From the IMG/VR virus record IMGVR_UViG_3300031933_000215, positions 62,001-126,000 of that record: DNA of 64,000 nt, one strand, 5' to 3'. Under the pieces are notes generated by a model. It ran no database searches. It saw nothing but the letters and a program-made list of their open reading frames with translations, and had not been told where the DNA came from. Both the position numbers and the translations under genes were made by a program. Of this stretch, positions 42,120 through 51,855 are shown piece by piece (position 1 is the first letter of the stretch; each line of letters opens with the position of its first letter).

Positions 42120-42183
42120 GTGTGTACCTGATGATATGCTTACATAGCAACCAATTCCGTTTCTCCTACGTAGGGTATTTCAA

Positions 42184-44463
42184 ATGGATAATCTGAAGAA
42201 ACTGTTTTCCGATCGCCACGACGCAATGAAAGGCGATTTCGAACTGACTGAATTTGTGGCCTCCCTGGAATCTGCTGGCGACGTCGTCGGTGGTCCCATG
42301 GCCGTATCTCGTGAGCTGGCTGCTCGTGTTTCCACCGAGTCTTTCGGTGAGATGGACCAGGAGTCCATGCACAGCTGTCGCGAACTGTACTCTTCTCTGG
42401 AAGACACCCTGGAGCGTCTGGGCTTTGAAAGCTTCAACGCCAAGCGCGGTGCCGACGCTTCCCGTATCGGCGAGAACCAGGTTCTGGCGGCAACCGTTGC
42501 CAACATCGCTTCCGGCGACGAAGTTCGCTACAAGAAAGCCCTGCGCGGCATGACCAGCGCTCCTCAGTCCAACAACCCGAACGTGGTTAACTTCAACCCG
42601 ATGGTTGAAGGTCCCAACGGTAACATGCCGGTACTGGCCGAAGGTCAAGGCCTGGAAAACTACAACGAGAAGTCCCAGCGTGATTTCCGTGTGGTTTCCG
42701 TTGCCTACAACCTGGCTGCTGCTCGTCAGGACGCGTTTGGCGAAGCCATCTACCCGACTGTGGTTGTGAACCCGACTGAAGGTGGTGTTACCCAGAACCT
42801 GACCTACGCTGCCGTTCTGAAGGACGTGTTCCACGAAGTTACTGGTGCCCTGTTCGACACCCGTGAAGTGAACATGGTTGAAGCCTTCCGTGACCCGGCC
42901 GTTCTGGAAGACGCCAGCACCAAGCTGGTTCCGGTAGTTGACGAGAAAGGCACCAACTCTGACGTATTCGTTGCCGACACCATTGTGGCTCCGAAGACCA
43001 TCGAACTGGACCGTGGCGGTTCTGTTGAAACTGCACCGCTGAAAGTGGGCCACAAGTTCGACCTGATCGGCGTTTCCAACCGTCAGCAGCTGATCGCTGG
43101 CAACCTGCTGGACAGCTCCGACACCATCGATCCGGCCATGCGTCTGAAGAACCTGTACGTTCAGACTGGCGGCACCAACAAGAAGGTTATCCGCTTCACT
43201 GTTGAGCGCATGCCGACTGCTGTGTTCCAGCCGAGCCTGACCAACGACACCCGTATCGCTCAGCTGAACTTCACCACCGAAGACATGGTTGTGAAGGCCG
43301 GCACCAAGGCGGTTGACGGTTCCACTGGCGCTGAGCTGGACGAAATCGCTTCCCGCGAATGGACCCTGCGCCTGAGCGTTGGCGTATCCGGTTCCGTGAG
43401 CCTGTCCAAAGGTGACACCTGGATCAACGCTACTCCGGTAGTGGTTGAGAAAGTACTGGACGCTGAAGGTACTGCTCTGAGCAAGAAAGACGGCGACGTT
43501 GCCACTCTGCTGAACGCCCTGGGCGATCTGACTGTTGTGGGTTACGACCTCGACGCACGCTTCACCAACACCAACCGTCGTGAGCGCGGCCAGCTGGTAC
43601 AGACTCGTACCCTGCAGTTCCGCTACCCGGTTCCGATGCACAGCCCGATCACTCTGCCGATGTCCACCATGGACGAGAACGGCCCGGGCGACGTGGTGAA
43701 GACGCTGACTGTTGCGACCAACATCCGCAACTCCAACAACGCTGTAACTCGCCTGCTGAACTACCTGTCTCAGCTGCGTGAAGTGACTTCTTCCGGTTAC
43801 GACCGTCCGAAGTTCGGTGCTGTTGAAGGTGCTCTGTCTGCCCTGATCCGTCCGACGTACCGTCACGCCAACCTGGACCTGCGTGAAGTCATCGACTCCA
43901 CTCGCAGCGGCGAGCGTTGGGAAGACGTGTGCCAGGCCATCCTGAACACTGTGAAGAGCATGCTGTTCCCGGCCTACCGCGACTCCAACATCGAAGCGGC
44001 TTACCAGACTGTAACTGGTAACGCAGATGAGCGTCCGAAGTTCATCATCGCGACCGACAAGGAAATCGCGCACTACCTGATGCTGAAAGGCGACGACCGG
44101 ACTCTGGGTGCTTACCTGAAGTACGACATCGTCTCCACCAACAACGAGCGTTTCGATGGCAAGATCGTCATCATCCCGACTCGTGAGAACCCGGTTGAGA
44201 ACGACATCCTCAACTTCGGTCAGTTCTACTACGTACCGACCATCGTTGCGGACCTACCGATCAGCCGTAACGGCCAGATCTCTCGTGAGATCGCTGCCGT
44301 ACCGTTCAACCTGCACGTTAACAACATTCCGTTTGCGATCGAAATCGACGTATCCGGTCTGCGTGACGTCATGGGTGAGTCTGTATTCATCAACAAGATC
44401 GGCTCTGCGGCCGACGCTGGTGATACTACAGCTGACAGCGGTGGCACCACTACTACTCCGTAA
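42184..44463 (+). CDS. major capsid protein (phiKZ gp120-like)
   Basis: 759 aa; propeptide ending near GLE|NYNE; YNL.AARQD.FGE..YPT, N.NRR.RG motifs; strong codon bias; strong terminator. Confidence 0.92.
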   Translation: MDNLKKLFSDRHDAMKGDFELTEFVASLESAGDVVGGPMAVSRELAARVSTESFGEMDQESMHSCRELYSSLEDTLERLGFESFNAKRGADASRIGENQVLAATVANIASGDEVRYKKALRGMTSAPQSNNPNVVNFNPMVEGPNGNMPVLAEGQGLENYNEKSQRDFRVVSVAYNLAAARQDAFGEAIYPTVVVNPTEGGVTQNLTYAAVLKDVFHEVTGALFDTREVNMVEAFRDPAVLEDASTKLVPVVDEKGTNSDVFVADTIVAPKTIELDRGGSVETAPLKVGHKFDLIGVSNRQQLIAGNLLDSSDTIDPAMRLKNLYVQTGGTNKKVIRFTVERMPTAVFQPSLTNDTRIAQLNFTTEDMVVKAGTKAVDGSTGAELDEIASREWTLRLSVGVSGSVSLSKGDTWINATPVVVEKVLDAEGTALSKKDGDVATLLNALGDLTVVGYDLDARFTNTNRRERGQLVQTRTLQFRYPVPMHSPITLPMSTMDENGPGDVVKTLTVATNIRNSNNAVTRLLNYLSQLREVTSSGYDRPKFGAVEGALSALIRPTYRHANLDLREVIDSTRSGERWEDVCQAILNTVKSMLFPAYRDSNIEAAYQTVTGNADERPKFIIATDKEIAHYLMLKGDDRTLGAYLKYDIVSTNNERFDGKIVIIPTRENPVENDILNFGQFYYVPTIVADLPISRNGQISREIAAVPFNLHVNNIPFAIEIDVSGLRDVMGESVFINKIGSAADAGDTTADSGGTTTTP

Positions 44464-44489
44464 GCTTTGACTTACCGTAGCTAGTGCAC

Positions 44490-44524
44490 AAAAAGGCGCC
44501 CTTCGGGGCGCCTTTTTTATGTCG
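44490..44524 (+). terminator. intrinsic terminator followed by TATGTCG
   Basis: AAAAAGGCGCCC-TTCG-GGGCGCCTTTTT. Confidence 0.9.
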
Positions 44525-44583
44525 TTCAAGGAATTACTCATGGTGGTGATACTATACACCCAAGCAAACACAAGGAACGAATC

Positions 44584-45234
44584 ATGACCGAACAAGATTG
44601 TACTGTTGAAGCCCATGTCCCGACTTTGAAAGAACGCTTCAGTGATTGGTGCCGCCGTACCTTCTCCCGACGGGACAATGACTCCGAAATGACGTCCCAC
44701 GCCATGCGGGAATTGACCCAAGCAGGCTTCTTTGATATCGACAGCGACTACGTTGGCATGTTGGGTCCTGCGGTACTGCGTTTGATCCAAACTCACGCCA
44801 AAGAGAACCACAGTGGTTTCTCCTCGTCGATTGCAGTGTCGCTGTTTGACCGGCTGGTGCAAGGTGAACCACTGTCGCCCCTAACGGGTGAAGAGAAAGA
44901 ATGGAGCGAATGGTACGAGGGCGAACTCCGACAAAACCTGCGTTGCAGTAAGATCTTCCAACGTAAAGATGGAACCGCCTACACGCTGGATGCGGTGATC
45001 TTCATTGACCCCAATGGCGCGTCGTTTACTTCCAAGGACAGTATTCGTGACATCCAGTTCCCGTACATGCCTCCGGCTCGACCGGAGTACCAACACAACC
45101 CACCCAAGGAAGTGATTCCGGAGAATCCGGTTAAAGGTACCGAGTTCATGTATAAAGGAGAACACTGGATCTACGATGGCGAATACTGGGTCGATGCTGA
45201 CGACTACCACGGACCCACGGTGATCAGGAGTTAA
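44584..45234 (+). CDS. conserved phage hypothetical protein
   Basis: A.REL, HSGFS, PLSPLTGE..EW, QN.R.S.IF motifs seen in many phage hypotheticals (from memory); C-terminal P.NP.KG...W.YDG..W module. Confidence 0.75.
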   Translation: MTEQDCTVEAHVPTLKERFSDWCRRTFSRRDNDSEMTSHAMRELTQAGFFDIDSDYVGMLGPAVLRLIQTHAKENHSGFSSSIAVSLFDRLVQGEPLSPLTGEEKEWSEWYEGELRQNLRCSKIFQRKDGTAYTLDAVIFIDPNGASFTSKDSIRDIQFPYMPPARPEYQHNPPKEVIPENPVKGTEFMYKGEHWIYDGEYWVDADDYHGPTVIRS

Positions 45235-45255
45235 CTTTTACTCGGTGGGTTATAG

Positions 45256-45530
45256 TATGCCAGTAACGGGTTTGCCTGCCCTGCATCGTTGACCTCGCCC
45301 GTTACTGAGACCCCTGTGATCCAGTCACAGCTTTACGACAAACGGTGGAAGCACTGGAGTACCACCAAAAGGCAATGTTGGCTTTTCATAAATGTCCTCT
45401 TCACTATAGGACTGCCGATAACTGCCCCGTGAGTTGGGAGCCTGACCCAATGCCTTCGAGCAATCGAAGTGCAAACCCTGCACGGGGCAACCTATTCCAA
45501 ACTCCCCTCCCCAAGTGGGAGGGGTTTATG
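45256..45530 (+). ncRNA. candidate ~270-nt structured non-coding RNA
   Basis: Starts at TATG, ends at terminator hairpin; six or more helices, loop-loop complementarity, multibranch 3' domain with GCAA tetraloop. Confidence 0.6.
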
Positions 45531-45555
45531 TTTCCCATCCCACGCAATTTAACCT

Positions 45556-45574
45556 CTATATCACTTAGTTGAAT
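45556..45574 (+). promoter_or_regulatory. putative early promoter
   Basis: CTATATCAC-ttagt-TGAAT. Confidence 0.75.
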
Positions 45575-45607
45575 CAAACCAACCCAATCCAACAAAAGGA
45601 TGACACA

Positions 45608-46057
45608 ATGATCAAAGTTACTTCAGTTGACCCAGTGATCGGTACCAACGAACTGACCAAAGACGACATCATGTACGTCGATACACATTGGTCAGAAATC
45701 GACGGCATTCGCTTCGTGGGCAATCGGTCCGATCTTGAACGGGCCAGTCTGCCTGTTCTGGAGCCGGTAAAGGTCGGCGATCGGTTCTACGGTGTGACAG
45801 TGCAGGTCCATTGGTCCGGTATGGTCGAATTCTGGTTCCATGCGGCGGATAAAGAAAACACACTGCATCTGGCCAAAGCCCTGGCGACTCAAAAGAAGTT
45901 GATTACAACGGTCACACACTTGGCCCGCATCTTGGTCCGTTTCGACCGTGACGGTTCAAGAGTGGGTGAAGTCGATACCTTGGATCGGTTCTATGAGAAC
46001 TTGGACCCGAAACAGCTCGACTACTCCACGTTCACTGGTGATATGATTCCGACATAG
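45608..46057 (+). CDS. hypothetical early protein
   Basis: ATG 45608 with AAGGA; own promoter and terminator. Confidence 0.75.
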   Translation: MIKVTSVDPVIGTNELTKDDIMYVDTHWSEIDGIRFVGNRSDLERASLPVLEPVKVGDRFYGVTVQVHWSGMVEFWFHAADKENTLHLAKALATQKKLITTVTHLARILVRFDRDGSRVGEVDTLDRFYENLDPKQLDYSTFTGDMIPT

Positions 46058-46067
46058 TCGGAATACC

Positions 46068-46099
46068 GGGGAGGGCTACGGCCCTCCCTTTTTTTTTTT
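46068..46099 (+). terminator. intrinsic terminator
   Basis: GGGAGGGC-tacg-GCCCTCCC + long T-run. Confidence 0.85.
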
Positions 46100-46148
46100 C
46101 ATCCCATTTTATTTCAAATCTACATTATAAAGGAGAGTAACGACCCAC

Positions 46149-46805
46149 GTGGAGTACCTCCTTATGTTTGACATCGAAGAGTTGGGCCGACGGGCCTACC
46201 TTCAGGAGCTTCAGTTTCCTGAAGTGCATCGTAAAACCAAAACCAAACGCAGTGGTCGGTATGTTGTAACTACGACCACCTACACCGCAACGTTCAACGA
46301 TCACGAGACCGCCGACATTCTGGTGGACAACATGCCCGACGTTCCGGACTGGGTGAAAGAAGACTGGTTCAGTCAAGACCATCCGGTCCGGGTGGCTGTG
46401 AAGGTCGAAGAAGAAGTAGCCGAAGGCGAGGAGATGCTCGCCCTCTTAGACCAAATGAAAAGCGGTGGTGCCGCTGATCTACTCTTGGGCTTTTACAGTC
46501 ACCGAAACGTGCAGTGTACGCACGAAGACAAAGGCGACAATCCAGAGGTCACGGCACTTCGAAAGGCATTGCAGGACGCCATGGCACCAAAAGGAGCGCC
46601 CCGACAAAAATTGTCCCGGCGGGCAGGGAGTGAAGCAACCCCCAAAGCCTGTCCGCCGGAGCAACACCATTCGGGGGGAACGCAGTGTCAACGGAAAGGT
46701 CCGGAGAACCGGACGTCAAAAAGGTCGGGTGGTCATACGCCCGGGAAAGCGATACCACACGTGAGTCTGAGTGTGGTGTCGGTGGAGACTCAATCAATGC
46801 AATAG
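46149..46805 (+). CDS. hypothetical protein (start may be ATG 46164); last ~75 codons overlap a structured RNA region
   Basis: 218-aa ORF; N-terminal 145 aa protein-like, C-terminus disordered-looking. Confidence 0.6.
   Translation: MEYLLMFDIEELGRRAYLQELQFPEVHRKTKTKRSGRYVVTTTTYTATFNDHETADILVDNMPDVPDWVKEDWFSQDHPVRVAVKVEEEVAEGEEMLALLDQMKSGGAADLLLGFYSHRNVQCTHEDKGDNPEVTALRKALQDAMAPKGAPRQKLSRRAGSEATPKACPPEQHHSGGTQCQRKGPENRTSKRSGGHTPGKAIPHVSLSVVSVETQSMQ
46599..46792 (+). ncRNA. candidate structured leader of the gp122-gp124-like operon
   Basis: Five helices and a possible H-type pseudoknot ending 22 nt before ATG 46815. Confidence 0.45.
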
Positions 46806-46814
46806 GGGATAAGA

Positions 46815-48029
46815 ATGGGACGGTTGAACCACATCTTCCCGTCGCTAGTGTCAGATGTGGTGCCACGACCAGCCACAACCAAGCCTGGGTTGAAGCATAC
46901 CTGTGTGCAGTACAGCATGCATAGTACCATGCGCTCGCCGATCTTCTGGCGGAACGCACTAGGGATTGTGGTATGCGAACCCGGAGCCTTATCGACAACA
47001 GCGGACGAGTATTTTTACATTACGATCGAGTACGAATTCGACCCCGGTGTAAAAATTGACTCGCGGGAGTTATTGTCTGAGTTAGAATTGCCGGACGATC
47101 ACGTTGAGCGAAAAGGTATTGTCGATGCGCTATCCACATTGGAGCGCGAACCTACCTGGTATAACCAGCGTAAATTCTCCTACACTCTGGGCATCTCCAG
47201 AGAGACGCTGGAACACATGGGTGGGGTTGTATACCTAAACGACGTAGACTTGGTGGTTGGGTTCGAGAAGCACCGAGACGCCGCAATCCATCCCTTCAGT
47301 CAACCGGGTCAGCGACAGCGCTTGAACGAAACGTTCCAAATGAACGACGGTTTAACGCAACGCTACCTCATGGTGGACAACTCGGGGATCAATGGAACAC
47401 GTTGGGTGAACACTGGATACGGTGTATTTGAGATACACAGTGTGCAGGACCCCCAATTGCGAGACGGTGTTTATGTCACTACCCGAAACACAGCAAACGC
47501 GGAACCGGAAACGGTTTTCTACGACTTCACCAATGCTGATAAAGCATTGGGCTTATACCGCAACCGCACGGAGGCGGAATCGTTCGGATCACCGGACGCA
47601 CGATTCAAGGCTGAGCTGAAAGAAGCTGAGCAGGATCTGACGCGAGAAAAGATGGATCTTCAACGCAACAAACAGGAGATCGAACGTGAACAACACGAAC
47701 TGGACCTCGAACGCCGCCGTTGGGACGACTACTACAAAGAAGAAGAAGCCCGACGAAAACGAGAACAAGATCAGCTAGACCTGGAAGTAAAACGACACAA
47801 AGAGGACATGGATAGACAGCGCGAGCGACTGAAGATGGAACGTGACCGCATGGAGTTTGAACGACAGACGTACTCGGAACGTCAGAAGTTTGAATACGAC
47901 ATGCGCAGCCGCGATCGGAAGGACCAAACCGATCAGTGGAAGTCCGCCGTCGAAGTTGGCAAGTTGTTTATTAGTGTCGTAGGGGTCGGTCTAGGCTTAG
48001 CGGCCTTGATCGTAAAACGACAAAAGTAG
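46815..48029 (+). CDS. conserved protein with long charged coiled coil and C-terminal membrane helix (phiKZ gp122-like)
   Basis: E/R/K-rich heptads then LFISVVGVGLGLAALIV; synteny. Confidence 0.75.
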   Translation: MGRLNHIFPSLVSDVVPRPATTKPGLKHTCVQYSMHSTMRSPIFWRNALGIVVCEPGALSTTADEYFYITIEYEFDPGVKIDSRELLSELELPDDHVERKGIVDALSTLEREPTWYNQRKFSYTLGISRETLEHMGGVVYLNDVDLVVGFEKHRDAAIHPFSQPGQRQRLNETFQMNDGLTQRYLMVDNSGINGTRWVNTGYGVFEIHSVQDPQLRDGVYVTTRNTANAEPETVFYDFTNADKALGLYRNRTEAESFGSPDARFKAELKEAEQDLTREKMDLQRNKQEIEREQHELDLERRRWDDYYKEEEARRKREQDQLDLEVKRHKEDMDRQRERLKMERDRMEFERQTYSERQKFEYDMRSRDRKDQTDQWKSAVEVGKLFISVVGVGLGLAALIVKRQK

Positions 48030-48075
48030 TCAATGACTCTGGTGTAAGTCATTGGCGGCAACAGCGAGAGTTTGG

Positions 48076-49701
48076 ATGGATAACGTACTGTTAGAGAGGA
48101 TCAAAGAGCGAACGCCTGCGTTCAACCGCACGATCACCAACGGTCTGGCGGTGGAACACATGATGTCAGTCAACTCCGATACCGGGGTGAACAGCACCAT
48201 GGCGTACATCGATCGACTGATCCGCATCAACCAGGAGTTGTTCCCGGAAGGGTTGACCTACGATGGCAGTCAGGTGTGCTCTCCAGTAAAACATTTTGAA
48301 GAGCTGACACGCGAGTACAACTCAAAAAGAATAGCCAACATCGCACAGTTCGATACTTACCTGGTCAAGTACCAGTTCTCGTACCATGGCGAAGCATTAA
48401 TGCCACGTTTCATTCAGCTACCGTTCGTACGGGATGGTGGGTTGATGACACTCAATGGCGCGACCTACAACGTCTCCCCGGTATTGACCGACGTGGGGTT
48501 CTCAGTGCTGAACGGTGGGATCTTCATCCCATTCCGACGGACTCGATTGAACTTCAAACGCACGGACCATCACTTCCTGGCCAACGGCCATCGGTGCATT
48601 GTGTACGTGATCTGGTCGATGATCCATAACGAGATGAGTAATCGCGGCAACCGTGATCTGGACAACCGCAAACCCATCCACTCGTCCTTGGCGCAATACT
48701 TCTTCTGCCGTTTCGGGGTGACCGGAACGTTTGAGAAGTGGGCCAATACGAAGGTGTGGTTGAAGTGGCGTGGCGAGGTGAACAAGAAGGAGTTCCCCAG
48801 CAACCAGTTCACGATCTTCGAATCGTTGACCCTGAAAGGAAAACACCCCACAGGCGACCTGTGCCTGATTGTCCCCAAAGAAGCCGACACGGACTTTGTG
48901 CGGATGCTGGTGGGTGGTTTCTTTTACGTGGTTGACACTTTCCCCGACCGTTTCCAGGAGGTGAGTTACGCCGATGACATCAGCCAATGGCGCATCATCC
49001 TTGGACACATGGTGTTCGGGGATTACGAACACGCCGGCAAGGTCTTGGAGAACATTGACACGCACATGCGTTCGCAAGAAGTGTCGCTGGATGAGATGAC
49101 CCGGGAGGAGCTGCGTTCGCGGCAAATCTACGTGGACAACATCTGGGACCTGTTCCACAAGATCATGACAGACCTCTCCCATCACTTCTACCAAACCAAC
49201 ACCGAAGAGACTTCGATGTACAACAAGAAGCTGATGGTCCTGCGCTACATCACTGAGGAATTCAACTCAGCGATCTCATTGTTTGGTTACGGCTTCCAGA
49301 GCCGGCATGACAAGCAGTGGACCGCCGACGAGTTGAACGACGCACTGAAGCGCTTGTTTAAACTCAATACCTGCACCAAACGCCTGACCGTGGATCACGG
49401 TGAGGTGAACACCGTCAGCTACCCCGGTGATAACAAGATCTTCCGGATCACTTCCATGTTGATCCCACAAGACAAAGCCCGGCGCGGACGTGGTTTTGGT
49501 AAAGGTCTCATTTCCGATACCAGTCGATTGCTGCACGCATCGATTGCGGAAGTTGGTCAGTTCAACAACCAACCGAAGAACAACCCGGATGGTCGAGCGC
49601 GAATCAATCCCAACATTCGCACTGAGGTCGATGGAACCATTCATCGCAACCCCGAACGGGAAGAACTGATCGATCGGACGCAAGCACGGTATCAACGTTA
49701 A
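48076..49701 (+). CDS. non-virion RNA polymerase beta subunit, N-terminal part (phiKZ gp123-like)
   Basis: LPFV..GG....NG, LHASIAEVG, PDGR.R.NP motifs; about 540 aa; position downstream of the capsid gene. Confidence 0.85.
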   Translation: MDNVLLERIKERTPAFNRTITNGLAVEHMMSVNSDTGVNSTMAYIDRLIRINQELFPEGLTYDGSQVCSPVKHFEELTREYNSKRIANIAQFDTYLVKYQFSYHGEALMPRFIQLPFVRDGGLMTLNGATYNVSPVLTDVGFSVLNGGIFIPFRRTRLNFKRTDHHFLANGHRCIVYVIWSMIHNEMSNRGNRDLDNRKPIHSSLAQYFFCRFGVTGTFEKWANTKVWLKWRGEVNKKEFPSNQFTIFESLTLKGKHPTGDLCLIVPKEADTDFVRMLVGGFFYVVDTFPDRFQEVSYADDISQWRIILGHMVFGDYEHAGKVLENIDTHMRSQEVSLDEMTREELRSRQIYVDNIWDLFHKIMTDLSHHFYQTNTEETSMYNKKLMVLRYITEEFNSAISLFGYGFQSRHDKQWTADELNDALKRLFKLNTCTKRLTVDHGEVNTVSYPGDNKIFRITSMLIPQDKARRGRGFGKGLISDTSRLLHASIAEVGQFNNQPKNNPDGRARINPNIRTEVDGTIHRNPEREELIDRTQARYQR

Positions 49702-49728
49702 ATCGAACCCAAAAGAAGGACGAAGGTT

Positions 49729-51855
49729 ATGTATCAATCCCAGGCCCAACAACCCCCAGTACCTTTTGATCAAGTTGATCAGAACACGTTCAACCACAAC
49801 CTCCCACAAGGCAACGACGTTTGGCCCCAATTGAACGTCCCTCAGCCGCTGGGTGGTCCAATCGTCGGACGGATCATCAGTGAGTTCCGTGCCTTGGCTC
49901 AAAGCCGAGTGATGACACACAATGCCACACCCTTGCACATGCTGGCTTACAACTTGATGAGCCAGAACTACTTCAACAACCAGCTGTTCTCTGATTGGTG
50001 TCAGCGTGCAGTGGACTTTGCCGAGTTCTTGGTTGTCGTGCAGCGCAACTCCCCGGATGTTGCCGTGCAGAAAGCGGTGATGAAGATCTACCGCAGCTTT
50101 CTAGCGGTGACTGCGGCCGAATACACCGTGGTGGCCCAACAGCTGGATCAGCGCACGTACAACGATCTGCTGGAAGCGAGTCGTGAGTTCCAAGACATCA
50201 TGAACGACATCAAGGCGTTCCACGCGAACGGTCGTCAAGCGCAACCGCCGGGTTACGGTGGTGGTCAGCCGTATGGCGGCGGTTACGGCGGCCAACCCGC
50301 CCAACCGTATGGCATGCCTCAGGGCGGTGGCTACGGCATGGGCGGTGGCTACGGTCAAGGTGGTGCCGGTCAACTCCCACCCGTCGGTGCCGCACCACGG
50401 CCCGCTCCGGCCCCGGCACCTGCGCCAGCCGGTTACGGTCAAACCGGTCAGACCGTTCAGCCTGGTACCGTAGGACGTGGCAGTCCGTCTGCCGGTCGTT
50501 ACGTTGACGACGTGGAACCGGTCAAGCCTCAGTCCTGGTCGTCTGGCACAGGTATGGGCCAAGGTCATACCCCAACCCAAACAACCGCGCCGGCTCAGCC
50601 AGAACCGGTTGTGCAGGACGAACCGGAAGGTATCCCACCGGCGAACTTGGATGCCGTGGTCATGGACCCGTACGCGTTCGTGCCCAAAGGGAAAACCATC
50701 GACCGCGAACGTCCGTACGATCACTTCTACAACCCAGGCGGTGTGGAAATCGTACCGGCTCACCTGTCGAAGTGGAAGCGGACCAAAGGCTCTGAGACAC
50801 CGTACGCCATTGGACACGATCCAGAGGAGTACGTGTTGTTCCACGTCCGTTGGCCCGATGGGGTGGTGCAGGAAAAAATCGTCACATGGGACATTGAAAT
50901 GGATTACCTCAAACACGAAATCAACGACAAACTGCGTGGACTGAAGATCAAGCCGGAAGGTAAGGTCATCGCCAGTCAGCACATGATCACTGACTACGAC
51001 GCACTGGATACCACCACGGAAGTGTTGGAAACGAAAGTGGAAGGCCCGCTCGACGTTCAGTCCGAACTGAACCCGGTTCAGATTGCCACGTTGTTCAGTG
51101 CCTCCAGTGATCTGGAAAACGAGCTGATGGCACGCAGTCAGCTGATCGAAGACCTGGAACTGCCGGCCGACACCAAGAAGCTCCCAGCGTACGAGTACAC
51201 CAGCGGTTGTCTGTTCCCCATCGACCTGCCCAAAGAGGTCGAGCAGAAACTGTTTGCGGTGACTGAGTCCAAGGGCATGGTGGGTGTTGCCAAACGCCTG
51301 CAGAACTTGGTTGAGTCCGGTGAACTCCCAGTGCGGTACTACCGCTTCTTCAATGAACGACTGACCAAAGCACTGAACACCGTGCTGGCCGACAACCTGG
51401 CACTCCCGAATCTGAAGATGGACAGCTTTGTGGACGACGTGGAAGAACTCTACGACGTGTTCAAGCACAGCAGCAAATACGATTCGGATCTGGTGACGGT
51501 ACTGGACAGCCAAACCCCGATGTTCTTGAAGCGCTGGTTCAACCTGGCGTACGAGCAAACGGAAGGGGACGGCGACGGTCAGCTGAGCCTGTTCGAGGAA
51601 GTGGTGAACCTTCAGACCCGTTGGGCCACTGAGGAAATCGCTTCGCTGAACCTCACGCCGGAGCAGCCGGTGCTGATCAGTCAAACCACTCACGCCAAAC
51701 TCTACGAGGTACTGCTTAGCATGGTTCGTCGGAACACCGATAAAGGTAATCTGCCGAACTGTCGCCTGCGCATCGTCTCGTCCGACGGTCACTACTACGA
51801 AGTGATTCGCGGTTGGCTCGTTGAAGGCTCCATCCTGTTGAAGGATCTGGGGTAA
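49729..51855 (+). CDS. conserved protein (phiKZ gp124-like) with G/Y/Q/P-rich low-complexity region
   Basis: 708 aa; GYGGGQPYGGGYGGQ... linker; MDY..HE motif; synteny. Confidence 0.75.
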   Translation: MYQSQAQQPPVPFDQVDQNTFNHNLPQGNDVWPQLNVPQPLGGPIVGRIISEFRALAQSRVMTHNATPLHMLAYNLMSQNYFNNQLFSDWCQRAVDFAEFLVVVQRNSPDVAVQKAVMKIYRSFLAVTAAEYTVVAQQLDQRTYNDLLEASREFQDIMNDIKAFHANGRQAQPPGYGGGQPYGGGYGGQPAQPYGMPQGGGYGMGGGYGQGGAGQLPPVGAAPRPAPAPAPAPAGYGQTGQTVQPGTVGRGSPSAGRYVDDVEPVKPQSWSSGTGMGQGHTPTQTTAPAQPEPVVQDEPEGIPPANLDAVVMDPYAFVPKGKTIDRERPYDHFYNPGGVEIVPAHLSKWKRTKGSETPYAIGHDPEEYVLFHVRWPDGVVQEKIVTWDIEMDYLKHEINDKLRGLKIKPEGKVIASQHMITDYDALDTTTEVLETKVEGPLDVQSELNPVQIATLFSASSDLENELMARSQLIEDLELPADTKKLPAYEYTSGCLFPIDLPKEVEQKLFAVTESKGMVGVAKRLQNLVESGELPVRYYRFFNERLTKALNTVLADNLALPNLKMDSFVDDVEELYDVFKHSSKYDSDLVTVLDSQTPMFLKRWFNLAYEQTEGDGDGQLSLFEEVVNLQTRWATEEIASLNLTPEQPVLISQTTHAKLYEVLLSMVRRNTDKGNLPNCRLRIVSSDGHYYEVIRGWLVEGSILLKDLG

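What the first reader, a model, noticed from the sequence alone, without database searches (positions are those of the whole stretch)
46599..46815. Helix-dense leader with a possible H-type pseudoknot just before the gp122/nvRNAP-beta/gp124 operon
Seen: CCCCGA/TCGGGG enclosing the 12-bp CCGGCGGGCAGG/CCTGTCCGCCGG (46616-27/46648-59); GTCCGG-agaa-CCGGAC; TCGGGTG-gtcata-CGCCCGG; and the 11-bp CGATACCACAC/GTGTGGTGTCG whose loop TGAGTCT (46762-68) matches AGACTCA (46786-92). Two reading frames stay open across most of it and neither looks like a folded protein. Established analogy: the T4 gene 32 leader pseudoknot nucleates translational autorepression. Inference: a cis-regulatory RNA that sets the level of non-virion RNAP, or a processed ncRNA embedded in a gene end. 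The 4-nt linker is short for the full pseudoknot.
Basis: partly seen in the sequence, partly recalled or inferred. Interest (0 to 1): 0.6.

Follow-up and report, generated by a model that had tools for sequence, protein, structure and literature searches.

The report
Frameshift-type signal inside jumbo-phage gene
The "structured leader" is really the two-frame 3' end of a phage gene, and its one conserved hairpin sits in a classic ribosome-frameshift layout that probably yields two versions of the protein just upstream of the phage RNA-polymerase genes.

Summary
It is not a leader. It lies inside a 213-codon gene (46164-46805), the first gene after a terminator, followed by the gp122-like, nvRNAP-beta-like and gp124-like genes of a phiKZ-like jumbo phage.

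Comparison with 14 related lineages shows three things:
- Only hairpin 1 (46616-27/46648-59) is conserved, with compensatory changes. Of 160 cells, 89% pair, against 78% in shuffles and 38-45% in slid controls.
- Hairpin 1 always lies 5-8 nt after an in-phase A-run (xAA AAA, 46606-10). A Shine-Dalgarno-like GGAG lies about 10 nt before the Lys codon. This is the three-part layout of the E. coli dnaX frameshift site.
- The +1 frame stays open to 46764 and ends in a basic peptide (GRxxΦR). That peptide shows a coding-type substitution pattern and, in six lineages, has no usable start upstream of the A-run.

The zero frame also ends in a conserved motif. Hairpins 2-4 and the proposed pseudoknot are not kept outside the closest relatives.

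Best reading: a programmed frameshift, net +1 and probably a -2 slip of tRNA-Lys, that gives two C-terminal isoforms. This rests on comparison only. An independently started overlapping ORF remains a serious rival.

The parts
46068..46099 (+). Intrinsic terminator after the preceding gene (9-bp GC stem plus T10). It marks the upstream end of the transcription unit that holds the finding.
46104..46163 (+). True leader of the operon. It holds the AT-rich motif TTTTATTTCAAATCTACATTATAA, identical in L004 and L005 and recognisable in L021, L010 and L007. It also holds the SD (GGAG 46151-54) for the ATG at 46164.
   Evidence: Promoter function is inferred.
46164..46805 (+). Frame A (zero-frame) gene of 213 codons (P0004). 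The N-terminal domain is folded; the tail from about residue 141 is disordered. The conserved C-terminal motif IPHVSLSVVSVE lies at 46752-46787. The stop TAG 46803-05 overlaps the SD of the gp122-like gene.
   Evidence: (46 synonymous: 17 non-synonymous codon changes against L004 upstream of 46598)
46591..46596 (+). Internal Shine-Dalgarno-like AAGGAG, 11 nt before the Lys codon of the slip site.
   Evidence: within the top 1-4% of background in 12 of 14 lineages, always at 9-11 nt
46606..46610 (+). A-run (A5), in phase as CAA AAA (Lys codon 46608-10). This is the proposed slip site.
   Evidence: xAA AAA in all lineages (A4 in Noxifer), although AAA and CAA make up only 45% and 41% of their codon families
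46616..46659 (+). Hairpin 1: a 12-bp stem (46616-27 with 46648-59) and a 20-nt loop, 5 nt after the A-run. It is the only conserved structure. The G-U pair shows that the sense-strand RNA is what folds.
   Evidence: It lies in a 69-nt run identical to L004, against 14% divergence over the whole gene.
46631..46633 (+). TGA stop of the -1 frame (frame C), in the loop of hairpin 1. A -1 slip would give a product truncated 7 codons after the slip.
46609..46764 (+). Frame B (+1 relative to frame A), open from the slip site to TGA 46762-64. It encodes 51 residues ending NGKVRRTGRQKGRVVIRPGKRYHT. The conserved basic block lies at 46690-46761.
46699..46781 (+). They are real in this phage but not conserved beyond its closest relatives. 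They overlap Arg/Gly codons of frame B and the C-terminal motif of frame A.
46803..46817 (+). SD (AGGGGA 46803-08) and ATG (46815) of the gp122-like gene (46815-48029). They lie 9 nt after the frame A stop and 50 nt after the frame B stop.

Best explanation
Region 46599-46815 is the 3' part of the first gene of the operon and is read in two frames. Ribosomes translating frame A (46164-46805) meet a three-part recoding signal:
- an internal SD-like AAGGAG (46591-96);
- an A-run in phase CAA AAA (46605-10);
- after a 5-nt spacer, a stable 12-bp hairpin (46616-59).

A fraction of ribosomes slips backwards on the A-run. tRNA-Lys can re-pair perfectly 2 nt upstream. These ribosomes continue in the +1 frame to the TGA at 46762-64. 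The product carries the folded N-terminal domain fused to an arginine-rich tail of about 51 residues ending in a conserved GRxxΦR motif. Ribosomes that do not slip make the 213-residue protein, with a disordered linker and a conserved hydrophobic C-terminal strand motif. They terminate 9 nt before the gp122-like start, in a position for translational coupling.

Shown:
- the coding signature of frame A up to the slip site and at its C-terminus;
- the coding-type substitution pattern and motif conservation of frame B;
- covariation of hairpin 1;
- the fixed spacing of SD-like element, A-run and hairpin in 15 lineages.

Inferred:
- that frame B is reached by ribosomal slippage;
- the size of the slip (-2 rather than +1);
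- any regulatory consequence for gp122 and nvRNAP.
For: 1. Hairpin 1 is conserved with compensatory changes. 89.4% of 160 cells pair, against 78% in shuffles (0/500). Seven of 12 pairs have changes on both sides (0/500). Slid controls pair at 38-45%. G-U at pair 43/79 in 9 lineages fits sense-strand RNA only.

2. All 14 lineages, plus L046, have the same layout: GGAG-like, then 9-11 nt, then xAA AAA, then 5-8 nt, then a 10-13-bp stem. The SD-like element ranks in the top 1-4% of background in 12 of 14 lineages.

3. The A-run is kept at two synonymous sites, although AAA and CAA are minority codons.

4. In frame B, pN/pS is 0.08-0.74, while frames A and C are at about 1 or above over the same bases. 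Differences per codon position are 0.29, 0.27 and 0.63.

5. Frame B stays open 44-108 codons after the slip in every lineage (codon-shuffle Fisher p = 0.0017). Frame C behaves as chance (p = 0.57).

6. Frame B has no ATG, GTG or TTG between its last upstream stop and the A-run in L021, L023, L025, L026 and L030. In L023 and L025 that stop lies only 5-6 codons upstream. In the window only two GTGs lie far upstream, without an SD. L026 has no SD-backed start anywhere in frame B.

7. The 69 nt over slip site and hairpin are identical between the window and L004, which differ at 14% of sites elsewhere in the gene.

8. Published rules fit (PMC5009743). An SD 9-14 nt upstream stimulates backward shifts, whereas 3 nt is the distance for +1. 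Structures start 5-9 nt downstream. Short spacers raise the ratio of -2 to -1. Phage Mu uses -2.
Against: - A canonical -1 slip at this cassette leads to frame C, not to the conserved frame B. Reaching B needs a -2 or +1 event, which is rarer.
- The A-run is only A5 (A4 in Noxifer, where -2 re-pairing is imperfect). It is not a classical heptamer.
- Eight lineages carry an ATG in frame B at 11-14 codons upstream of the slip, more than chance predicts. Four of them have a fair SD, for example AAGGAG-7 nt-ATG in L014. Frame B may therefore be started independently there.
- The openness of frame B is only moderately significant once the T-poor composition is kept.
- The SD-like element overlaps semi-conserved Gly/Glu-x-Pro codons, so peptide constraint may contribute to it.
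- There are no RNA, ribosome-profiling or proteomic data.
- The lineages are related, so the combined p-values are optimistic.
Confidence: 0.5

Rival explanations
1. Frame B is an independent overlapping (overprinted) small gene for a basic peptide. It is started at its own codon: about 12 codons upstream of the A-run, or internally about 25-30 codons before its stop. Hairpin 1 then has another role in the mRNA, such as ribosome pausing, stability or processing.
For: - ATG in frame B at -11 to -14 codons in L004, L024, L009, L010, L014, L028, L031 and L046. That is 8 of 12 upstream ATGs falling in a 4-codon window.
- Fair to strong SDs in L014, L009, L010 and L031.
- SD-backed GTG or ATG about 25-30 codons before the frame B stop in L004, L021, L023 and L024.
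Against: - No such start exists in the window itself: it has ACG where L004 has ATG, and GTC where L004 has GTG.
- L026 has none, and L023, L025 and L030 have none upstream of the slip. Yet the frame B motif is conserved in all of them.
- This reading does not explain the invariant in-phase A-run or the fixed spacing of SD-like element and hairpin.
Confidence: 0.22
2. The cassette drives a dnaX-type -1 frameshift (frame A to frame C). The short out-of-frame extension yields a truncated protein without the disordered tail and C-terminal motif. Conservation of frame B is unrelated to the cassette.
For: - 'A AAA' allows perfect -1 re-pairing of tRNA-Lys in all lineages, Noxifer included.
- The SD distance (9-11 nt) and spacer (5-8 nt) are those of -1 sites.
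- Frame C stops within 10 codons in 9 of 15 lineages, often at the first loop codons: window TGA 46631-33.
Against: - Frame C length is as expected by chance (p = 0.57). It runs 53-82 codons in L010, L014 and L030, with no conserved sequence.
- This reading leaves the maintained frame B, which lacks a start in several lineages, unexplained.
Confidence: 0.13
3. One reading: a structured leader or H-type pseudoknot that acts as a translational operator or processed ncRNA and sets the level of gp122, nvRNAP-beta and gp124, as the T4 gene 32 leader does.
For: - The stretch folds well (z = -3.7).
- Hairpin 4 shows one compensatory change in L021 and one in L004.
- The frame A stop lies next to the gp122 start, so events in this region could influence downstream translation.
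Against: - The region is coding in two frames.
- Hairpins 2-4 and the pseudoknot are lost in L023, L024, L028 and all more distant lineages, while the peptides are kept.
- The pseudoknot loop changes in L004 without compensation.
- Rfam gives no match.
- The real leader lies at 46100-46163.
Confidence: 0.05
4. The helices are by-products of composition: Arg, Gly and Pro codons (CGG, GGC, CCG) in a T-poor, dual-coding stretch. They have no RNA-level function.
For: - Hairpins 2 and 3 coincide with GR…RP and TG codons of frame B and shift register in L021.
- T content is only 12-19% in the tails of all lineages but Noxifer (21%).
Against: - Hairpin 1 keeps pairing through changes on both sides that alter the peptide (Cys to Arg, Pro to Leu, Arg to Gln).
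- L026 has a 12-bp stem of largely different sequence at the same place.
Confidence: 0.05

Closest known systems
E. coli dnaX programmed -1 frameshift cassette (tau/gamma; Rfam RF00382)
   Same: It has the same three parts in the same order and spacing. An internal Shine-Dalgarno-like element lies about 10 nt upstream, a lysine A-run is the slip site, and a stable stem-loop starts 5-8 nt downstream. One gene gives two products that differ at the C-terminus (spacing rules: PMC5009743).
   Different: - The slip site is xAA AAA T (A5), not A AAA AAG.
- The conserved alternative frame is +1 (reached by -2 or +1), not -1.
- Rfam gives no match.
- The gene is a jumbo-phage protein of unknown function, not a clamp-loader subunit.
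Programmed -2 frameshifting in phage Mu tail-assembly genes, and the G/GT-type frameshifts of tailed phages
   Same: A tailed-phage gene gives two proteins with a common N-terminus and different C-termini by a backward slip into the +1 frame. Such an arrangement is usually found by comparative analysis, as here (PMC5009743).
   Different: The gene lies between the major capsid gene and the nvRNAP-beta operon, not upstream of a tape-measure gene. No similarity to tail chaperones was found. Here the zero-frame product is the longer one.
Overprinted phage genes such as lambda Rz/Rz1 (a +1-frame gene embedded in another gene)
   Same: A second conserved ORF lies in the +1 frame inside a disordered part of a longer gene. 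Some lineages have their own SD and ATG for it.
   Different: The window and several other lineages have no start codon for the embedded frame. An invariant slip-site-plus-hairpin cassette marks its upstream end.
T4 gene 32 leader pseudoknot
   Same: It is a structured mRNA segment upstream of a phage gene whose dosage matters.
   Different: This element is not in an untranslated leader. The pseudoknot is not conserved. No adjacent unstructured operator is present, and no autoregulatory single-strand-binding protein is encoded here.

Membership tests
dnaX-type -1 PRF cassette (RF00382) | Slippery heptamer A AAA AAG (X XXY YYZ) in the zero frame | tested here: not met
   The zero frame reads CAA AAA TTG. 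The run is only five A's, and the base before it is C or G in all 15 lineages.
dnaX-type -1 PRF cassette (RF00382) | Internal Shine-Dalgarno-like sequence 9-14 nt upstream of the shift site | tested here: met
   AAGGAG 46591-96. The best anti-SD duplex lies at 9-11 nt in all 14 lineages and is within the top 1-4% of background in 12.
dnaX-type -1 PRF cassette (RF00382) | Stable stem-loop 5-9 nt downstream of the shift site | tested here: met
   10-13-bp stem, 5-8 nt after the A-run, with covariation.
dnaX-type -1 PRF cassette (RF00382) | The -1 frame gives a defined, conserved (truncated) product | tested here: not met
   Frame C ends after 0-82 codons, which is no different from chance.
dnaX-type -1 PRF cassette (RF00382) | Match to the Rfam covariance model | tested here: not met
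   No frameshift-element family matched at E <= 1 in 45000-48500.
Programmed frameshift into the +1 frame (-2 or +1) giving two C-terminal isoforms | Conserved ORF in the +1 frame overlapping the zero-frame ORF, with a coding signature | tested here: met
   Frame B is open 44-108 codons in all lineages (Fisher p = 0.0017). pN/pS is 0.08-0.74. The third codon position varies about twice as much as the first two. A GRxxΦR motif lies near its end.
Programmed frameshift into the +1 frame (-2 or +1) giving two C-terminal isoforms | The alternative frame lacks its own initiation signal | tested here: inconclusive
   No usable start in the window, L021, L023, L025, L026 or L030. Eight other lineages have an ATG at -11 to -14 codons, four of them with a fair SD.
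Programmed frameshift into the +1 frame (-2 or +1) giving two C-terminal isoforms | Shift site that allows re-pairing in the new frame | tested here: met
   tRNA-Lys on AAA (46608-10) re-pairs perfectly at 46606-08 (-2) in the 14 lineages with A5. In Noxifer (GA AAA) re-pairing is imperfect.
Programmed frameshift into the +1 frame (-2 or +1) giving two C-terminal isoforms | Trans-frame protein detected | not testable with these tools
   No RNA or proteome data for this phage or its relatives.
Translational operator / leader pseudoknot of the T4 gene 32 type | Located in the untranslated leader of the regulated gene | tested here: not met
   It lies inside a gene with a coding signature in two frames. 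The real leader is at 46100-46163.
Translational operator / leader pseudoknot of the T4 gene 32 type | Conserved H-type pseudoknot | tested here: not met
   The proposed loop-to-downstream pairing holds in 65% of cells. It is lost outside the closest relatives, and the loop changes in L004 without compensation.
Intrinsic (rho-independent) terminator | GC-rich hairpin immediately followed by a U-run on the transcribed strand | tested here: not met
   No U-run follows hairpin 1 on the + strand. On the - strand the T5 run lies 5-8 nt from the stem, the G-U pairs would become C-A mismatches, and no - strand gene converges here.

The most novel reading that the evidence does not exclude
A dnaX-style cassette (SD-like element, A-run, hairpin) drives an efficient -2 frameshift in a family of jumbo phages and acts as a ribosome switch for the operon. 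Ribosomes that stay in frame terminate on the gp122 start and pass on to gp122, nvRNAP-beta and gp124 by coupling. Shifted ribosomes terminate 50-85 nt upstream and make an arginine-rich-tailed isoform that may bind nucleic acid, possibly its own structured mRNA. Frameshift efficiency would then set both the isoform ratio and the dose of non-virion RNA polymerase.
Probability: 0.1. Interest if true: 0.75.

Novelty: new member of a known kind. Interest (0 to 1): 0.5.

Why it matters
I found no report of programmed frameshifting in phiKZ-like jumbo phages; one full-text search for 'jumbo phage' with 'programmed ribosomal frameshift' returned only two unrelated papers. If confirmed, this would add a recoding site with dnaX-like stimulators that leads into the +1 frame, a rare combination. 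It would also reveal a hidden protein isoform encoded directly upstream of the non-virion RNA polymerase genes. Current annotation pipelines miss it, because every gene caller listed only the zero-frame ORF. The cultured relative Noxifer, which infects Pseudomonas fluorescens SBW25, carries a version of the cassette, so the idea can be tested directly. The work also gives a cautionary point for genome scans: dense hairpins in a T-poor, Arg/Gly-rich dual-coding stretch are mostly by-products, and only comparison separates the functional helix from the rest.

Tried and rejected
- Nucleotide and tblastn searches of the phage collection with the region and with P0001 found nothing. Only the gp122-like protein finds named phages, and Noxifer is the nearest at 37% identity.
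- Rfam gave no relevant family.
- Pfam and PHROGs gave nothing for the frame A protein or for the frame B peptides. The ESM Atlas gave nothing above noise for a frame B peptide.
- The AlphaFold2 model of frame A gave no Foldseek match in BFVD or PDB at E <= 0.001, so the protein's function stays unknown.
- L001 is the same phage at 99.97% identity and was useless for covariation.
- The covariance model R1 found no second copy in the 232-kb genome.
- R1 found no copy in RsoM3USA, Xoo-sp14, FLC9 or PhiEaH1, where the gp122-like gene follows the capsid gene after a non-coding gap.
- A pattern scan of IMG/VR returned 27 loci, of which only 3 were true cassettes and one was new (L046).
- No RNA sequencing run holds the region. 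Laying DNA contigs showed only identity.
- Internal initiation at the SD-like AAGGAG was considered and rejected, because no start codon follows at a workable distance in any frame in most lineages.
- A minus-strand terminator, a DNA cruciform, transcriptional slippage (the A5 run is too short and would need neither SD nor hairpin) and gene-60-type bypassing (no matched take-off and landing codons) were also rejected.
- The outer CCCCGA/TCGGGG helix is altered in L004 and absent in other lineages.
- In one search six 57-nt rows were copied by hand from the output into a script.
Full report
**1. Where the finding lies**

The window is part of a 231.8-kb virus record with terminal repeats. It encodes a PhiKZ-type major capsid protein at 42184-44463 (PF25620, E = 3e-218) and a Tad3-like protein. 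It also encodes a gp122-like protein (46815-48029, phrog_7727), a polymerase/nvRNAP-beta-like protein (48052-49701, phrog_2943) and a gp124-like protein.

The stretch 46599-46815 is not intergenic. It lies inside an ORF running from the ATG at 46164 to the TAG at 46803-05, 213 codons long. A strong intrinsic terminator (46068-46099) precedes this gene. Between the terminator and the gene lies an AT-rich motif that is identical in close relatives and recognisable in distant ones. The real leader of the transcription unit is therefore at about 46100-46163.

**2. The observation**

The stretch folds at -87.4 kcal/mol, against -70.0 +/- 4.7 for shuffles (z = -3.68). Two frames are open. Rfam has no match. 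Independent freshwater metagenome contigs carry 46547-46900 without a single difference or indel, so the frames are not an assembly artefact.

**3. Relatives**

The named phage collection holds nothing close; Noxifer is the nearest, with 37% identity in gp122. Protein word searches, contig look-ups and collection scans gave 14 further lineages. Their gp122-like proteins are 37-87% identical to the window's. In all of them a gene of the same family lies directly upstream of the gp122-like gene (alignment A7).

**4. Which helices are conserved**

- Hairpin 1 (46616-27 with 46648-59) is present at the same place in every lineage as a 10-13-bp stem.
- On a 14-sequence alignment, 89.4% of cells pair, against 78% in shuffles (0/500). 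Seven of 12 pairs show changes on both sides (0/500). Slid controls pair at 38-45%.
- The compensatory changes alter the encoded peptide. Examples are TGT to CGT with GCA to GCG, and CGG to CAG with CCG to CTG in L021. L026 has a 12-bp stem of largely different sequence. The helix is therefore selected as RNA.
- The frequent G-U pair shows that the sense strand is what folds.
- Hairpins 2, 3 and 4 and the proposed pseudoknot pair in only 79, 48, 65 and 65% of cells on a 7-sequence alignment. They break in L023, L024 and L028, and are not found in more distant lineages.

**5. The context of hairpin 1**

- In all lineages the hairpin starts 5-8 nt after an A-run in fixed phase, xAA AAA. The run is A5 in 14 lineages and A4 in Noxifer.
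- AAA and CAA make up only 45% and 41% of their codon families in this phage. In-phase xAA AAA occurs once in 2641 other codons.
- A Shine-Dalgarno-like GGAG lies 9-11 nt before the Lys codon. It ranks in the top 1-4% of background in 12 of 14 lineages, while the peptide over it varies (KGAP, GENP, EETP, RGID).
- Between the window and L004 the gene differs at 14% of sites, but the 69 nt covering slip site and hairpin are identical (P about 2e-5 for a run of that length at a given place).
- SD-like element, lysine A-run, spacer and stem-loop make up the anatomy of the E. coli dnaX frameshift site. An SD 9-14 nt upstream favours backward shifts, while 3 nt is the distance for +1. Structures normally start 5-9 nt downstream (PMC5009743).

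**6. The frames**

*Frame A.*
- Upstream of the slip site, frame A carries the coding signature: 46 synonymous against 17 non-synonymous changed codons versus L004.
- Its C-terminus, IPHVSLSVVSVE, is conserved as a peptide across lineages. Third-position changes and a switch of serine codon family (AGT to TCG) show this.
- Frame A is therefore translated to its stop, which lies within about 12 nt of the gp122-like start in nearly all lineages.

*Frame B (+1).*
- Between the hairpin and the frame A C-terminal motif, frame A has no conserved sequence and AlphaFold2 models it as disordered.
- Over the same bases, frame B is open for 44-108 codons in every lineage.
- It ends 47-85 nt before the gp122-like start in most lineages. 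The exceptions are L025, where gp122 was probably called too far downstream, and L046, where frame B ends about 155 nt before the frame A stop and the gp122-like start was not mapped.
- It carries a basic motif, …TG(R/K)QxGRxxΦR… or …GRxFR….
- Its pN/pS is 0.08-0.74, while frames A and C are at about 1 or above. Substitutions per codon position are 0.29, 0.27 and 0.63.
- Against a conservative codon-shuffle null that keeps the T-poor composition, the openness of frame B gives a Fisher p of 0.0017.

*Frame C (-1).*
- Frame C behaves as chance (p = 0.57).
- It stops after 7 codons in the window (TGA 46631-33), but runs for up to 82-83 codons elsewhere.

**7. How frame B is reached**

In L021, L023, L025, L026 and L030 there is no ATG, GTG or TTG in frame B between its last upstream stop and the A-run. 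In L023 and L025 that stop lies only 5-6 codons upstream. The window has only two distant GTGs without an SD, and L026 has no SD-backed start anywhere in frame B. The conserved cassette is therefore the obvious entry point.

tRNA-Lys on AAA (46608-10) can re-pair perfectly 2 nt upstream. The SD distance argues for a backward slip. Short spacers are known to raise -2 relative to -1, and phage Mu uses -2. I therefore favour a -2 frameshift, which gives a product of about 200 residues. The +1 version is P0044, 199 residues.

**8. What does not fit**

- A standard -1 event leads to frame C, not to frame B.
- The A-run is short, and it is only A4 in Noxifer.
- Eight lineages have an ATG in frame B at 11-14 codons upstream of the slip, which is more than chance predicts. 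Four of them have a fair SD. Several lineages also have an SD-backed GTG or ATG about 25-30 codons before the frame B stop.
- Frame B may therefore be started independently in some lineages. The window itself has neither of these starts: it has ACG and GTC where its 87%-identical relative L004 has ATG and GTG.
- All evidence is comparative, and no RNA or protein data exist.

**9. Function**

The frame A protein has no Pfam, PHROG or structural match. The frame B peptides have none either.

The following points are inference only:
- The two isoforms would share a folded N-terminal domain. One would end in a short hydrophobic strand motif, perhaps a docking motif. The other would end in an arginine-rich tail, perhaps nucleic-acid binding.
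- Only unshifted ribosomes terminate at the gp122-like start, so the shift could also tune coupled translation of the downstream nvRNAP-beta operon.

**10. Verdict**

The best explanation, at about 0.5, is a programmed frameshift cassette in a dual-coding gene end. It is a new member of a known kind and can be tested in phage Noxifer.

Noticed in passing
window 44584-45234 (+): The ORF matches Pfam PF25185, the Type I Thoeris inhibitor Tad3 (E = 5e-31). This is an anti-defence gene between the capsid gene and the operon studied. L004 and L005 have it too.
   Followed up: no
window 45504-45534 and 46068-46099 (+); 46104-46130: There are two strong intrinsic terminators on the + strand. After the second lies an AT-rich motif (…TTTCAAATCTACATTATAA) that is conserved upstream of the homologous gene in L004, L005, L021, L010 and L007. 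Similar TATATTAC- or TATATCAT-like motifs precede the gp122-like gene in FLC9, PhiEaH1, RsoM3USA and Noxifer. This may be a phage-specific, early-type promoter. The motif occurs only once in this window.
   Followed up: partly
L004, L024, L009, L010, L014, L028, L031 and L046: 11-14 codons upstream of the A-run, frame +1: An ATG recurs in the +1 frame at a nearly fixed distance from the slip site. The frame A residues that produce it differ (D-A, N-E, H-V, H-G, Y-D, D-V). The window has ACG at this place. This is unexplained. It may be an independent start for the +1-frame peptide.
   Followed up: partly
window 46815-48029 (+), protein P0002: The gp122-like protein has a folded-looking N-terminal half. 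It is followed by about 110 residues of highly charged Glu/Arg/Lys-rich sequence that looks like coiled coil, and by a C-terminal hydrophobic helix (LFISVVGVGLGLAALIV) that looks like a membrane anchor.
   Followed up: no
window, five large genes (42184-51855): In-phase xAA AAA occurs once in 2641 codons, against about 4 expected from codon frequencies. This may be avoidance of slippery lysine runs elsewhere in the phage, but the numbers are small.
   Followed up: partly
L035-L038 (RsoM3USA, Xoo-sp14, FLC9, PhiEaH1): In these cultured jumbo phages the gp122-like gene follows the capsid gene directly, after a 230-430-nt non-coding gap with terminator hairpins. The gene family that carries the cassette is missing there. 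It is therefore an accessory of the Noxifer-like and metagenomic clade.
   Followed up: partly
The change preserves both reading frames but shortens the helix.
   Followed up: yes
whole region: The same phage sequence is held by gas-well, rock and subsurface metagenomes, which may be the source, and by three freshwater metagenomes from other studies. No RNA run holds it.
   Followed up: partly
window 42166-44073 (-): A 635-codon open frame runs antisense to the major capsid gene. It is probably a compositional artefact of the capsid gene's codon usage.
   Followed up: no
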